DNA of 60,221 nucleotides, taken from Lenisia limosa. Lineage: Eukaryota; Protista; Breviatea. The stretch spans positions 1-60,221 of the forward strand of contig LPNZ01011044.1 in the NCBI GenBank assembly GCA_001655205.1. Direction: 5' to 3'. The notes under the pieces are model-generated. The model was not told the origin of the DNA. It was given only the letters and a program-made list of their open reading frames with translations, and did no database searches. A program made the position numbers and the translations under genes. This document shows positions 17,262 through 23,505 of the stretch, in pieces (the first letter of the stretch is position 1; each line of letters opens with the position of its first letter).

Positions 17262-20200
17262 ATGAAGTAAGACCTTCTCTTGCCTAAACAACTCACTATT
17301 AGGATTACTGTTAATTGTGACAGAGCAGAGAGTGCTACTCTTCTTGTCTCTATCCAGCCCTATTATAAAAGAATCTATATCTGGCCTTTCATTATCCTTT
17401 ACGTTGCTGTACTGTGAGTTCCCTTCTCAATTTTGATAATATTTTAGAGCGGTTACATTGAGCACAAGTTTCTTTGATGATTTACTTGTTGCCCCAGACC
17501 TCGAGGAGACAAGTGTTTGTGAGGGTTTCTATGACATCACTGATATATTTGTTTGACTTTTCAGCGTTACATCAATGTTGAGCGTGAATATGACCCCGAG
17601 GATGAATACGATCTACCACCCCCCGAAATGACACATCCTGCGTTGGCAATGCTTGGATTTATTGCAATTATGCAGGTAAGATTCCTCGATTTATTGTCCT
17701 TCCCTTATGCTCATGTATCAGGGACTTGTGTATGTGAGTGCGTTCTGGACCGCCAACATTGAAGCGAAGCTCTCCTGGAGGCCAGCTCGAAACCTGAAGG
17801 AGGCTGAGGCCTGCCTTGTGAACACGAAGCCTCATTGCGGCAAGCCTGTGATCTGCCCCATCAAACGCAATTCGGCTGGTACTCTCGTCATTGAATTTCA
17901 AAACCAAGTAAGTGAGATAGTAACGGAAGTGATTGAGTGGAAGGGAATGATAAATGTGGGTTTGTCTTTCAATGAAAATGATGACACTTCAGACGTTCCG
18001 CTGGCTGCCCAGTTCAATGGATGGGAGCGAGAACCCCTCAAGTGACCCGGTGGTATGGTTGACACTTTATGTTCCCTAATTCTTTCAGTGTGGCTTTGGC
18101 AAAGAGCACGGCGGATTCCATGCCTACAAATTCCATTCAAGTCGCATCATTTCAGAATATGCTGATGGTCTGCTTACCCTGTTTTTGTTCGAATTCCTTG
18201 TCTTTCCCCACTCCTCTCATAAATTTAAGGAGGTCTTACCACAAGCGATGCTGCTGACACTCTTAAACAGTTGGTTCTACTTCCCCAATCGTTTTTAAAG
18301 GTGGATAACTGATTGTTTTTTTAGATACGGGCCAAATGAGGTTAAAGTTCCTCTTCCCAAACTCAAGGACCTTTTGGTTGCACAATTCGTTGCCCCGTTC
18401 TTCCTCTTCCAGGTATTTCTTCTTTCACGTTGAGTAAGTTTATTATTTCTAGGTCTTCTGCATTCTGCTGTGGTCATTGGAGGACTATCTCGTGTATTCG
18501 TTTTCTTCATTGTTGATGTTGGTCTTTTTTGAGTTCACAGTGGCAAAAACGGTGAGAGAGGGGGGGGGGGGGCTGAAAGGNNNNNNNNNNNNNNNNNNNN
18601 NNNNNNNNNNNNNNNNNNNNNNNNNNNNNNNNNCTCTCAGCGCCAGAAGACAGCTTCAACCCTTCGCACTATGGCATCTGCACCTCCTTCAATCCGATGC
18701 AAGCGCAATGGTTAGATCAGCCTGTTTTGTACTGTTGTTTTCTTTATGCTGTCGAAGAGTTGCCCATGTTTTCTTTATGATATCGAAGAATTGCCCATGT
18801 TTACTGAACCTTCCAGGCACATGGCAGTCGGTTGCAGCGAATGAGCTTGTTCCAGGCGATGTGGTGTCTGTTGATGTGACTGAGAACACCCTTCCTGCCG
18901 ATCTTCTCGTAAGAACACGTCTATTTTTTGTTATGAGTATCTTGTGCGTAGTAACGTAGAGATGAGGGTATTTATAGCTTAGCTTCTCTCCGGTGAATGT
19001 ATTGTCAATGAGGCCATGCTAACGGGTGAAACCGCTCCCCAACGCAAGGTTTGCACCATGAATTTCTCCTGCTATTAAAACATCTTAAATATTTCGAATT
19101 ATTGTTTTTTTTAATCAATATAGACATGTGCTCCTCCTTCTATCCAAGACTCTCGCCTCGACGTTGAAAAGCACAAGGACCACGTCCTATTTGGAGGTAC
19201 CACTGTTGTACAAGCCAAACAAGGAAAAAAGAAAAGTTTGTCATTCTCCTCAAAACCATTTGACAATATTAGACTCTGAAAATACCGTGCCAGCCATGGT
19301 CATCAGAACCGGGTTCGACACAAGCCAAGGCCAGCTGATGCGTATTATTATGTTCAGGTGGGTTATCGAGAAGTTTTTAGTTGCTGGATCTTCACCTACA
19401 TGGATTATTTCAATGCATGGTGTGGACACCTTGAGATAATTCACCTTCTTCTGTTATTTCTTCATAGTATAACAAATAATACGAATACGAAATATCTTAT
19501 TCAATGTGTACGGAAAGCAGGTGTCCCAACACAACATGACGATTATAGTGCTGACCGCATCTCGATCAATGACAAAGAAACTGGCTATTTTATCCTGTTC
19601 CTTCTTTCCCTTGCGTCTCTCGCTGCCTACTATGTCTATAAACGAGGTAAGTTATCATTACATTAAAATCAATGTATTTCTCCACCCTACTCATTCTCGT
19701 ATTAACAAATAGGAATTGAAAGAGCGCTCTCTCCCTATAAGCTCATTTTGGAAGTCTGTTTCATTCTCACTTCTGTGGTACCCCCCGAACTTCCAATGGT
19801 TGGCAATTTGTCGGGGTCGCTATATTTTTGATTNNNNNNNNNNNNNNNNNNNNNNNNNNNNNNNNNNNNNNNNNNNNNAGAGAAACAGATTCACTCTTGT
19901 ACACGTCAGGGTTCACAGTATTTAGGAGTTAACTATTGCGGTGAATGCTAGTCTTGGTGCTCTCAGGAAAATGGGTACGAAATTCTCTTTCCTTGCCTAA
20001 TTATTTTAGCGCTATTTTGTACTGAGCCGTTCCGTATTCCTCTTGCAGGAAAAATTGAAATTTGCTGCTTCGATAAAACCCTCACGGTACGTTGTTGTCT
20101 CAGGAGCTCAAAACCTAGTTGACTTCTGACGAAATGGTTGTTCGAGGAGTGTCTGGGTAGGCGTTTTAGCACTTTTATGTTCGTTCTAACTCTTTAGACT

Positions 20201-23200
20201 GAGCGGAAATGACATCACAGCGACAACAGACCTTCCCATCCACATTACCCGCACAATGGCAGCCTGTCAATCTCTGGTATGACAAGCGTTTGATGACTGA
20301 CACCGTAGGTGTTGATTGGAAACAAAATTGAAGGCGAGCCAATGGACAAAGCGTCTATGAAGGCTGTGAAGTGGAGCATCGGTATTGACAAAGTCGCTGG
20401 ATCCGGGGAAACCATGGTCATCAAGGAACGGTACTTCATCACTTCCCCTCTATGTTGGTCTCATGATTTAGGTTCCTTTTCCACCCTGAAACTCGCAGAA
20501 CCACAGTGGTTGCTGAGCGGATTGCGCCTGGATGTATGATGGGGGCGGCTTTCTTACTCCTATTACTGTACTAGACCGTTAAACACCATTATCTGCTTCG
20601 CTTTCTATCTCATCACTAGGTTCTGGGAAGTACTTCACTCTGACGAAGGGTGCTCCTGAAGCGGTGAAACCCCTGCTTACCAAGGTTTCTGGAGTGACAT
20701 TCTGTCTCCGCCCCGAAGTTCATTTTCTCACTGTGGAACAGGTTCCCGAAGACTACGACGCTATTTCACGCTATCATTCCGCTCGCGGGTCTCGCGTCAT
20801 TACAATGGCTCAGGTTGAGTTCCCTTCTTCTGAGTTCTCGGTTTGTGGGGCTCTCTTGAACAGGTTAATTAATGGGGCTCTCTGGGGGTGTTGGTTTTTA
20901 GTAATAGTGATTGTTTCAATAAACCGATGTTTCATTGATGCGACAGTTTCGTCGCAACTCTCAGACCAAAGCCGAAGAAGGACTAGCGTTTGCCGGCTTC
21001 CTCATTCTAGATTGTCCCATCAAGCCTTCTTCTGCCCCTTCTATTGCCACCTTAAGAACAGGAGGACACAAGGTATGGATGTAACTTCCCTTCTTATCCT
21101 CTAGTGTGTCATGATTACTGGTGACAATGCCCTGACAGCCTGCCATGTTGCTCTCGAGGTAGGCTGGATTTCTCCCTCTTTTGTGGCCTTTCTCCATTAA
21201 CAATTCATACCTTCCTTTCCCTTGTATTTCTTGTGAGAGAAAATTCTCACGCTGAAGGTCGGGATGACCGAGAAACCTTTCCTGATTCTTGATACTGACA
21301 ACGATCTCTGGACTACTGTTGATGGAAACAAATCCCTGCCATTCGAACCAAATAAGGTATGCATTCGGTTTCCTCGAGTCTCACTGTCAGCATTCTGTCA
21401 ATTCCATGTGCGAGGACTATGCCCTAGCTGTTTCTGGAGTGGGGCTGGAATGGCTCATTGAAAAAGAGGCGTTGGACGTTCATCTTTTCCACATTGTCGT
21501 TTACGCGAGAACCACCCCTCAGCAAAAGGTAGGGTTTCCATACGGACCAACCCCTTGTTTAGGAAGAAGTGATCACGTCCTTGAGCCGTCAAGGCTACAT
21601 GACATCAATGTGTGGCGATGGAACCAATGACGTTGGCGCCCTCAGACAGGCCCACTGTGGTGGGTGTTCACAATATTGCTTCAACACCCAATTTTCCTGG
21701 ATCATTCAAGCGTTATCTTTTAAGGACTTGCTCTCCTTGGTAGTGCTGACGCGAACACTCCTCAGGCCAAAAGTAAGATTATTTCTCAAAAATTTTGCGA
21801 TTGTATTTAAATACTCTGAAGGTTTGAAGGCGGCACAGGCTAAGTTGAAAGAAAAGAAGACTAAGGCCGATAAAATCGCCCAGGCTGCTGCTCTAATCAA
21901 GGTATATTTTTTTTCAAAAAGGTTTATCTTTTTAGGCACAACAAAATAAGCCAGAACTTACGAAAGAAGAAAAAGTGGCAAAGAAAAAGAAGGAGCTGAA
22001 GGTATATGATTCAATGAACCAAACACATTGCTTTTTTGTATTGATATTTGATTTTAGAAGGTCACGTTAACTCCCTAGGATGCCTGGGCTGAAACCCTGG
22101 AGAAGCTTGCGGAAGCTGAGGATGATGAGAATTCGCTAGTTGCGGTAAGCAGCAGTTGGTCAAACTGACAGAGTAGCTTGGTGATGCGTCCATTGCGGCC
22201 CCCTTCACCTCCAAAGCCTCCAACATCAAGGGAATGGTTTCGCTTGTGCGACAGGTTTGGCCGTGTTTGCGTGATGTAATTTTCAGGGTCGCTGTGCACT
22301 TGTGACAACTCTTCAAATGTACCGAATCCTTGCAATCAACTGTCTTGTATCCGCCTATGCACTTTCTATCCTCTACCTCGAAGGTTGGTTGCTGCAGATA
22401 AGCAGCTGACCAAACAGGTGCCAAGTACAGCGATGTCCAAATGACCCTGATGGGTATCTGCATGGCCGGCTTTTTCTTTATGATCACTCGTGCCCAGCCT
22501 CTGAAAGAGCTCTCCCCACATCGTCCACCTTCTTCAGTTTTCTCAGCTTCAAGTATGCCTCCCTTTGAGTTACTTTGTGCATCCCTTTTGGCAAAACTAA
22601 CAACTTCCAGTGATGCTCTCTATCATTGCCCAATTTTTGGTCCACCTCTACTGTATTTACCTTGCCGTTTTGAATGGACTTGAATATATGGATCCGTAGG
22701 CGGTGCTTATTGTCTTCTTGTTCTTTTTGTTAAGAGATTTTTGTGGATACAACCAAAGCGTTGTTTGATTATTGCGTAGGGAGCGCAAGATTGACTTGGC
22801 AGCTAAATACTCTCCAACACCGTTGAACGCGGTGGTGTTTGTAATGGCTTTTGGAATGCAATTGGCGACATTTGCCATCAATTTCAACGTGAGTCTTCAT
22901 TTTGTACTCTCACTAGGTTTAGGGCCACCCCTGGATGACCGGGCTTTCTGACAACAAACCGCTCAGAAATAGCATGTTCTTTTGCTATGCTGGGCTTATT
23001 GCCATTTGCCTAGGCTCTTTCGACTCCCTCATGACTCTGTTTTCTCTTGACCCATGGCCCGAAAATCTTGGTAGGTTGATTTGACACAATAGTGACTTTC
23101 AAGGACATCAAACTGCCACGATTGTTCTCTTGGACGTAGGAGCTGCCTTCTGTGTGGACCGATTTATCCGATTCCTTATTCCCGTCCAGGTAAGGCTCTA

Positions 23201-23260
23201 TTGCTGCCTTGTTGTGTTAATATTTAGGGTTTGGTGAAAAACAAGTACAAAGGTAACTAA
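17262..23260 (+). CDS. ATP13A1: P5A-type ATPase (Spf1/ATP13A1)
   Basis: [166 protein letters not shown]. Stop TAA 23258-23260. Phosphorylation motif is aberrant (see findings). Confidence 0.95.
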
Positions 23261-23505
23261 GCCTCAAAGGTGGTAATGCATGACTTTTTAGAAAAAACCA
23301 CGGTACATCTCAACATTATATATATCATATCGTATAATACATAATACATGTACATATATTCACCTCCAAGGCTCAATCTAAAAAAACAAGTATCCGAGCA
23401 TACATACTACTAGTCAGGCAGACTCCAGACATTACTAATTCAATCTTGCTGGAGTTCACATTGTGTTGTGACTGAGGTGACTTACTGCTGAGTATCAGAT
23501 TTAAC

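What the first reader, a model, noticed from the sequence alone, without database searches (positions are those of the whole stretch)
20063..20133. P5A-ATPase phosphorylation motif reads DKTLT instead of the near-invariant DKTGT
Seen: exon codons TGC TGC TTC GAT AAA ACC CTC ACG (CCFDKTLT), then a 32-nt GT-AG intron (20087-20118), then TTG ACT TCT GAC GAA (LTSDE). Reading through the intron hits a stop, and the other AG (20103) also gives a stop, so this splice is forced. The result is [12 protein letters not shown] where ATP13A1/Spf1 have CCFDKT-G-TLTSD. Known: DKTGT is the P-type ATPase signature around the phosphorylated Asp. The Asp is intact and the rest of the gene (PPELP, KGAPE, TGDN, GDGTND) looks undecayed. 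Inference: this is either a naturally variant catalytic loop or a partially disabled P5A. Oddly, the junction also spells GGT ACG TTG (G-T-L) five nucleotides after DKT, so an unusual splicing or intron-sliding history, or an assembly artefact, is not excluded.
Basis: partly seen in the sequence, partly recalled or inferred. Interest (0 to 1): 0.72.

Follow-up and report, generated by a model that had tools for sequence, protein, structure and literature searches.

The report
P5A pump with DKTLT phosphorylation loop
An intact, transcribed gene for the endoplasmic-reticulum P5A pump of a short-intron protist really does carry leucine where about 270 other P5-type pumps checked here carry glycine, next to the aspartate that is phosphorylated; this is a rare natural variant, and whether the pump still works is untested.

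Summary
Window 20063-20086 reads CCFDKTLT. A 32-nt GT..AG intron (20087-20118) follows, and the exon resumes with LTSDE. An independent contig build of the DNA run (word depth 40) matches the window letter for letter. A spliced polyA-RNA contig covers the exon with no differing letter. No single excision of 15-60 nt, whatever its ends, yields DKTG. CTC encodes Leu elsewhere in this same gene.

The gene (17262-23260, + strand) can be read as 42 exons and 1189 codons, with 41 GT..AG introns and no internal stop. It has the P5A hallmarks: PPELPME, best matches to ATP13A1/Spf1, and intact TGE, KGAPE, TGDN, GDGTND and the loop Asp, Lys and both Thr. It keeps 146 of 167 columns that are at least 97% conserved in 82 full-length P5A proteins.

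Gly is present at this position in all 120 P5A homologues fetched, and in every complete P5 loop among 150 representative fragments.

Assembly artefact, alternative splicing and codon reassignment are therefore excluded. I could not decide whether the enzyme is active or impaired. I favour an active pump with altered kinetics, because the wider HAD fold leaves this position free. Relatives from other breviates could not be reached.

Novelty: new variant of a known kind. Interest: moderate.

The parts
17262..23260 (+). P5A-type ATPase gene (ATP13A1/Spf1 orthologue): 42 exons, 41 GT..AG introns of 32-191 nt, 1189 codons, ATG at 17262, TAA at 23258-23260
   Evidence: Exon model and per-exon translation; tblastn with three full-length P5A proteins; 15 introns printed as RNA joints plus 8 inferred from the totals
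20010..20086 (+). Exon 19, encoding (A)[25 protein letters not shown]
   Evidence: PDB match: [22 protein letters not shown] of ATP13A1, E 7e-9
20072..20074 (+). GAT, the aspartate that is phosphorylated in P-type ATPases
   Evidence: aligned to the D of DKTGT
20081..20083 (+). CTC = Leu at the glycine position of DKTGT
   Evidence: The DNA contig is identical and the RNA contig shows no difference. The aligned column is G in 82 of 82 references. CTC aligns to conserved Leu elsewhere in the gene
20087..20118 (+). Intron 19, 32 nt, GTACGT..CTAG. 32 nt is the shortest intron class in this gene (five introns)
   Evidence: joint and piece totals and depth arithmetic
20119..20156 (+). Exon 20, [12 protein letters not shown](G), which completes DKTLT-LTSD
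19022..19033 (+). A-domain dephosphorylation motif, reading TGET where P5A proteins usually have TGES
19781..19798 (+). PPELPM of transmembrane helix 4. The E at 19926-19928 in the next exon completes the P5A signature PP[D/E]LPxE
   Evidence: motif definition from PMC10654040
20646..20660 (+). KGAPE nucleotide-binding motif
21117..21128 (+). TGDN motif of the P domain
   Evidence: RNA joints on both sides of this exon
21614..21631 (+). GDGTND motif of the P domain

Best explanation
This is the organism's P5A-type ATPase, the orthologue of human ATP13A1 and yeast Spf1, which is the endoplasmic-reticulum pump that pulls wrongly inserted membrane helices back out. Its phosphorylation loop genuinely reads D-K-T-L-T in the genome and in spliced mRNA (shown). 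The gene is otherwise complete, expressed and conserved (shown). I infer that it is a lineage-specific substitution in a working gene, not decay or error. The enzyme most likely still forms the aspartyl-phosphate on the Asp at 20072-74, because every residue known to carry out the chemistry is kept. The position three residues after the Asp is free to vary in the wider HAD phosphotransferase fold. The bulky Leu probably changes loop flexibility and so the rates of phosphorylation or dephosphorylation, rather than abolishing them (inferred, not tested).
For: Sequence and forced splice. DNA: an independent contig build at depth 40.5 has 0 differences. RNA: a spliced contig lies over exons 19-22 with no differing letter, and the totals of 23 joints and 32 pieces are met only if it carries 3 joints (worked through with the model). 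No second DKTG-encoding site exists in the 60-kb window. CTC is Leu at columns that are Leu in 82/82, 81/82 and 81/82 references. Integrity: 42 exons, 1189 codons, no stop, all introns GT..AG. TGE, PPELPME, KGAPE, TGDN, QQK and GDGTND are present. 146 of 167 near-invariant columns are kept. Conserved exons are 47-51% identical to P5A proteins of dictyostelids, animals and Capsaspora. GGN to CTC needs at least two base changes, so this is not a single recent hit or a one-base error. HAD motif I is written DXDX[T/V], meaning the fourth position is not fixed (PMC3946280). P5A is typically single-copy (PMC10654040), so this is probably the only copy.
Against: Gly at this position is present in all 120 P5A homologues fetched, all 82 aligned full-length ones, and every complete P5 loop among 150 representative fragments. 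That points to strong selection within P-type ATPases, which the wider HAD argument does not address. The gene has more changes at near-invariant columns (21) than any of the 82 references (maximum 18, median 0). The A-domain motif also deviates (TGET), so constraint may be relaxed. Expression is low (RNA contig depths 2-29). No relative from the same lineage was found to show whether the Leu is conserved. The DNA run is probably the source of the assembly, and both runs come from one study. The exact RNA joint at 20086/20119 was not printed.
Confidence: 0.55

Rival explanations
1. The Leu is real but cripples catalysis. On this reading the protein is a slow or dead pump, kept for a function that needs no phosphorylation (for example binding helices), or it is tolerated because the pump matters less in this anaerobic protist.
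For: Gly is invariant in every P5 loop sampled. This gene is the most divergent at near-invariant columns (21 of 167). A second signature motif is altered (TGET). Yeast survives without Spf1 (PMC10654040).
Against: A dead enzyme would not be expected to keep D, K, both T, TGE, KGAPE, TGDN and GDGTND, or an unbroken 1189-codon frame across 41 introns. Most of the 21 changes are conservative. Other P5A proteins also vary at the last position of TGES: SGES in 4 and TGEG in 1.
Confidence: 0.3
2. This is a diverged duplicate, and a second canonical DKTGT P5A elsewhere in the genome does the normal job.
For: Only this window could be read. The gene is unusually divergent.
Against: P5A is typically one gene per species (PMC10654040). 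No other P5A was noted in 726 windows of this genome (weak evidence). The gene keeps all P5A-specific motifs and is expressed.
Confidence: 0.1
3. It is an artefact: an assembly or sequencing error, an alternative splice, RNA editing, or a reassigned codon restores DKTGT in the real protein.
For: An N run sits 200 nt upstream. Earlier notes on this genome report non-AG splice sites. GGT ACG TTG lies 5 nt downstream.
Against: The DNA contig at depth 40 is identical, and the N run is only a mis-sized gap inside an intron. The change needs at least two bases. No excision of any kind gives DKTG. The RNA contig has no differing letter and no indel, and it is spliced. CTC is Leu elsewhere in the gene. 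No spare exon exists in the window.
Confidence: 0.03

Closest known systems
Human ATP13A1 and yeast Spf1 (P5A-ATPases, ER transmembrane-helix dislocases; PDB 9jbx, 6xmp)
   Same: Best PDB matches for the loop exon and the A-domain exon. PPELPME in helix 4, KGAPE, TGDN, GDGTND, overall order and length (1189 codons) all agree. Conserved exons are 47-51% identical to P5A proteins.
   Different: DKTLT instead of DKTGT, and TGET instead of TGES. There are 21 changes at columns that are at least 97% conserved in 82 P5A proteins.
HAD-superfamily phosphotransferases (motif I DXDX[T/V])
   Same: Same fold and the same chemistry of an aspartyl-phosphate on the first Asp. The position three after the Asp is not fixed in this superfamily (PMC3946280). 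That is why a non-Gly residue there need not abolish phosphoryl transfer.
   Different: These are soluble phosphatases without the A, N and membrane domains. Within P-type ATPases this position is Gly and forms part of the defining signature.
Sphaeroforma arctica P5A (P0122)
   Same: A natural P5A with a deviant signature motif (TGEG for TGES) and many changes at near-invariant columns (18 of 176). This shows that divergent but complete P5A genes exist.
   Different: It keeps DKTGT. Its variation is in the A-domain motif only.

Membership tests
P-type ATPase superfamily | Signature D-K-T-G-T-[LIVM]-[TI] around the phosphorylated Asp | tested here: not met
   The sequence reads D-K-T-L-T-L-T. 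Six of the seven positions are met; the Gly is Leu.
P-type ATPase superfamily | A-domain TGE motif (dephosphorylation glutamate) | tested here: met
   [10 protein letters not shown] at 19022-33, aligned to LTGESVPQMK of ATP13A1. The last position is T rather than S.
P-type ATPase superfamily | P- and N-domain motifs KGAPE, TGDN and GDGxND, plus the conserved Lys before GDG | tested here: met
   KGAPE at 20646-60, TGDN at 21117-28, QQK at 21520-28, GDGTND at 21614-31.
P-type ATPase superfamily | Formation of an acid-stable aspartyl-phosphate during the cycle | not testable with these tools
   Needs the expressed protein and labelled ATP.
P5A subfamily (ATP13A1/Spf1) | PP[D/E]LPxE in transmembrane helix 4 (P5B has PPALP) | tested here: met
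   PPELPM at 19781-98 plus E at 19926-28. Definition from PMC10654040.
P5A subfamily (ATP13A1/Spf1) | Closer in sequence to P5A than to P5B pumps | tested here: met
   Loop exon: ATP13A1/Spf1 E 7e-9 to 4e-8, against ATP13A2 at 1e-3. All top full-length matches are P5A.
P5A subfamily (ATP13A1/Spf1) | Extra N-terminal helices Ma/Mb and an N-terminal domain | tested here: inconclusive
   Exons 2-8 encode about 250 residues before the YGPNE block, including a hydrophobic [12 protein letters not shown] stretch. Similarity there is weak (tblastn E 0.64), and no Pfam match was found per exon.
P5A subfamily (ATP13A1/Spf1) | P5A-I marks KR...KGAP in the N domain (PMC7065118) | tested here: inconclusive
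   KGAPE is present. The KR position reads RR (ETRRTTVV).
P5A subfamily (ATP13A1/Spf1) | ER location and helix-dislocase activity | not testable with these tools
   Needs cell biology and biochemistry.

The most novel reading that the evidence does not exclude
The only P5A pump of a free-living eukaryote cannot be phosphorylated normally, because the signature glycine is replaced by leucine, yet it is kept intact and expressed. That would mean the ER helix-removal function can be served, at least in part, without the classical P-type phosphoenzyme cycle.
Probability: 0.15. Interest if true: 0.65.

Novelty: new variant of a known kind. Interest (0 to 1): 0.4.

Why it matters
DKTGT is the sequence by which P-type ATPases are recognised, and genome inventories discard candidates that lack it (PMC10763278). 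A natural, expressed P5A reading DKTLT has three consequences.

- Strict motif filters would miss a real pump.
- It provides a ready-made natural test of whether the glycine is needed for phosphoenzyme formation or only tunes its kinetics.
- If the pump turns out inactive, it would raise the question of how a eukaryote copes with, or re-uses, a disabled ER helix dislocase.

It is a single residue in a single organism, with no biochemical data, so its present weight is moderate.

Tried and rejected
1. Read laying printed 15 of 23 joints, and the one at 20086/20119 was among the 8 omitted. I reconstructed it from the totals and the bin depths.

2. The word search with the 56-aa stop-free piece found no candidate. 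It also missed fragments that the exhaustive search later found, so this blank says nothing.

3. The exhaustive representative search returned no self hit and no close relative, only P5 fragments at up to 85% identity.

4. The metagenome scan for CCFDKT followed by x and T, with x not G, A, V, D or E, stopped at 120 rows. All but one were chance matches.

5. I tried to rank this organism's own protein or a sister breviate's protein first by aligning exon pieces with a full-length P5A. MAFFT scattered the fragments (A1; local trials), and the expected score gain was too small, so the third word search was not spent.

6. No ORF with a start codon covers exon 19, so exact-sequence look-ups of called genes were not possible.

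7. Pfam on single exons gave only sub-threshold E1-E2_ATPase matches.

8. Paper searches for DKTLT and for the SERCA Gly354 found nothing relevant.

9. Rfam found nothing in the window. Earlier findings searched by sequence gave a blank.

10. Rejected readings:
   - Intron sliding, or use of GGT ACG TTG: it lies 5 nt out of frame, and every 27-nt excision that would use it has non-canonical ends.
   - Translational bypass: the RNA is spliced.
   - A hidden alternative exon in the N gap: the gap is really 16 nt.

Full report
**What is in the sequence**

One search shows TGC TGC TTC GAT AAA ACC CTC ACG at 20063-20086. GT follows at 20087-88, AG lies at 20117-18, and TTG ACT TCT GAC GAA starts at 20119.

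A PDB sequence search of the stop-free piece 19952-20086 matched human ATP13A1 and yeast Spf1 over [26 protein letters not shown], against [22 protein letters not shown], with E 7e-9 to 4e-8. The P5B pump ATP13A2 scored only 1e-3.

**Can splicing give Gly?**

I enumerated every single excision of 15-60 nt around the site, whatever its ends.

- 265 excisions leave an open frame, and none produces DKTG.
- The only stop-free GT..AG choice is 20086/20119, giving [20 protein letters not shown]. This aligns residue for residue with the consensus DKTGTLTSD.
- Earlier notes of this scan (unchecked leads) report micro-introns ending in TG or GG in this genome. I therefore also considered GT(20087)..TG(20121). 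It gives DKTLT-TSDE, still with Leu and one residue short.
- The GGT ACG TTG at 20086-94 lies 5 nt out of frame with DKT. Every 27-nt excision that would join it to ACT TCT has non-canonical ends.
- That string is simply the exon's last G followed by a GTACG donor. GTAC donors occur in 3 of this gene's 41 introns.

**Reads**

The look-up of sequencing runs returned two runs from one study: X1 (holds all sampled words, probably the source of the assembly) and X2 (polyA metatranscriptomic RNA). Both are held as contigs.

- An X1 contig of 11,274 nt at word depth 40.5 covers 18634-23400 with no differing letter.
- Its only departure is that 29 of the 45 N at 19834-19878 are absent. The gap is therefore really 16 nt, and it lies inside intron 17.
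- X2 gave seven spliced contigs over the gene, with no differing letters and no indels.
- The tool printed 15 of 23 joints, all GT..AG, and 10 of 32 pieces. The joint at 20086/20119 was among those not printed.
- Using the exon model, the totals can be accounted for only one way:
  - joints: 1+4+2+3+3+3+7 = 23;
  - pieces: 2 from X1 plus 30 from X2.
- This requires the contig that gives depth in 19864-20454 to have four pieces and three joints, that is exons 19, 20, 21 and 22.
- Its depth in bin 20061-20257 (1.51) equals 2.40 x 124/197. The 124 nt are 26+38+60 nt of exon with the 32-nt and 41-nt introns removed.
- Depth alone cannot separate the AG acceptor from the TG acceptor 3 nt downstream. 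It does rule out intron retention.
- So the RNA carries CTC and is spliced here. The exact acceptor is inferred from the canonical AG and from the alignment.

**The gene**

I used three full-length P5A proteins as tblastn guides, the RNA joints and GT..AG sites.

- The gene reads as 42 exons from ATG 17262 to TAA 23258-60. It has 1189 codons and no internal stop.
- There are 41 GT..AG introns of 32-191 nt. Five are exactly 32 nt, so the intron in question is ordinary for this gene.
- Two donor choices remain unresolved: exon 6 at 18049 or 18052, and exon 25 at 20813 or 20840. Both are in frame. The depth arithmetic favours 18052.
- Motifs verified: TGET 19022-33, PPELPM 19781-98 plus E 19926-28, DKTLT 20072-86, KGAPE 20646-60, TGDN 21117-28, QQK 21520-28, GDGTND 21614-31.
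- PP[D/E]LPxE is the P5A mark (PMC10654040).
- Exon peptides were handled one by one throughout.

**How unusual is the Leu?**

- The exhaustive representative search with the 56-aa piece found 575 proteins at E up to 1e-3.
- The best 150 break down as follows:
  - 145 read DKTGT;
  - three read DKTG and one reads DKTV, then run into an intron;
  - one reads CCFDETGT;
  - two further DKT strings lie outside the loop.
- None of the 150 has Leu.
- A word search seeded with the Sphaeroforma P5A gave 4516 homologues. All 120 listed read DKTGTLT.
- In an alignment of 82 full-length P5A proteins the column is Gly in 82 of 82.
- No paper in the library has DKTLT in an ATPase context.
- A metagenome pattern scan for non-Gly variants returned almost only chance matches. 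The one true P5 context was a soil contig reading DKTRT with a frameshift just after it, probably a decayed copy.
- GGN to CTC needs at least two base changes.
- CTC aligns to Leu columns elsewhere in this gene, including columns that are Leu in 82/82 and 81/82 references. A reassigned codon is therefore excluded.
- No other DKTG-encoding site exists in the window.

**Is the gene under constraint?**

- Conserved exons are 47-51% identical to P5A proteins of dictyostelids, animals and Capsaspora.
- Of 167 covered columns that are at least 97% conserved in the 82 references, the window keeps 146.
- The 21 changes are mostly conservative (V/I, S/T, K/R, L/I, F/L, D/E).
- The non-conservative ones include the Gly-to-Leu, an invariant Glu-to-Ala in [10 protein letters not shown], and FSSxLKRMS becoming FHPETRRTT.
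- This is more change than in any reference (maximum 18 of 176, in Sphaeroforma; median 0).
- The reference set is biased towards animals and towards sequences similar to the seed.
- The A-domain motif TGET is a mild deviation. Among the homologues TGES occurs 108 times, SGES 4 times and TGEG once.

**Interpretation**

Shown:
- a real, expressed, complete P5A gene with Leu at the signature Gly.

Inferred:
- It is probably the organism's only P5A, since P5A is typically single-copy (PMC10654040).
- It probably still works, because all residues that carry out phosphoryl transfer and hydrolysis are kept.
- The wider HAD fold writes its first motif as DXDX[T/V], with this position free (PMC3946280).
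- Against this stands the complete invariance of Gly in the P5 pumps sampled, together with this gene's above-average divergence.

My estimates are roughly 0.55 for an active pump with altered kinetics, 0.3 for an impaired pump or pseudo-pump, 0.1 for a diverged duplicate beside a canonical copy, and 0.03 for an artefact.

**Organism**

- The tools code it as 'organism A'.
- Earlier notes of this scan call this genome the breviate Lenisia limosa. I did not test this.
- The run data (2016, polyA metatranscriptome plus a 71-Mb contig set) and the roughly equal distance of this P5A to amoebozoan, holozoan and animal proteins are compatible with that name.
- This gene's introns (all GT..AG, at least 32 nt) differ from the 21-26-nt GT..TG introns those notes describe.

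**Comparison with what is known, and verdict**

- The locus works like ATP13A1/Spf1 and is a member of the P5A subfamily on every sequence criterion tested.
- It fails the strict P-type signature at one of seven positions.
- It is a new variant of a known kind. Interest is moderate (0.4).
- It matters for motif-based inventories of pumps (PMC10763278) and as a natural test of what the glycine does.
- It remains one residue in one organism until biochemistry or sister lineages are examined.

Noticed in passing
window 19022-19033: The A-domain dephosphorylation motif reads TGET instead of TGES. Among about 113 P5A homologues, TGES occurs 108 times, SGES 4 times and TGEG once (Sphaeroforma); TGET was not seen.
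   Followed up: partly
window 19834-19878: The N run of 45 is too long by 29: the contig of run X1 bridges it with 16 letters. It lies inside intron 17 (19799-19925), so it hides no exon.
   Followed up: yes
window 17262-23260: All 41 introns of this gene are GT..AG and at least 32 nt long (mode 32-34). Earlier notes on the 'same genome' describe abundant 21-26-nt introns ending in TG or GG. Either the genome has two intron classes, or the assembly holds more than one eukaryote.
   Followed up: no
window 20086-20094: GGT ACG TTG (G-T-L) spans the exon's last G and the first 8 nt of intron 19, 5 nt out of frame with DKT. It is explained as the exon's final G plus a GTACG donor. A historical trace cannot be ruled out, but no splice can use it.
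   Followed up: yes
window 18325-18412 and 20472-20533: Non-conservative changes occur at columns invariant in 82 P5A proteins. One is Glu to Ala in [10 protein letters not shown]. Another is FSSxLKRMS becoming FHPETRRTT (S to P, K to R, M to T). This gene has the most such changes of all sequences compared (21 of 167).
   Followed up: partly
window 18049-18053 and 20813-20841: Two exon ends have two in-frame GT donors each (exon 6: 18049 or 18052; exon 25: 20813 or 20840). RNA depth arithmetic favours 18052. There is no RNA over exon 25.
   Followed up: partly
L039:1199-1221 (minus strand): A soil metagenome contig carries a P5-type loop reading [24 protein letters not shown], followed by a frameshift. 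It is probably a decayed P5 copy or a poor contig, and it was the only true P5 context among 120 pattern matches.
   Followed up: partly
P0090 (117-aa metagenomic fragment): A P5 fragment whose loop reads CCFDETGT (Lys to Glu next to the phosphorylated Asp). It is another rare variant of the signature, of unknown standing.
   Followed up: no
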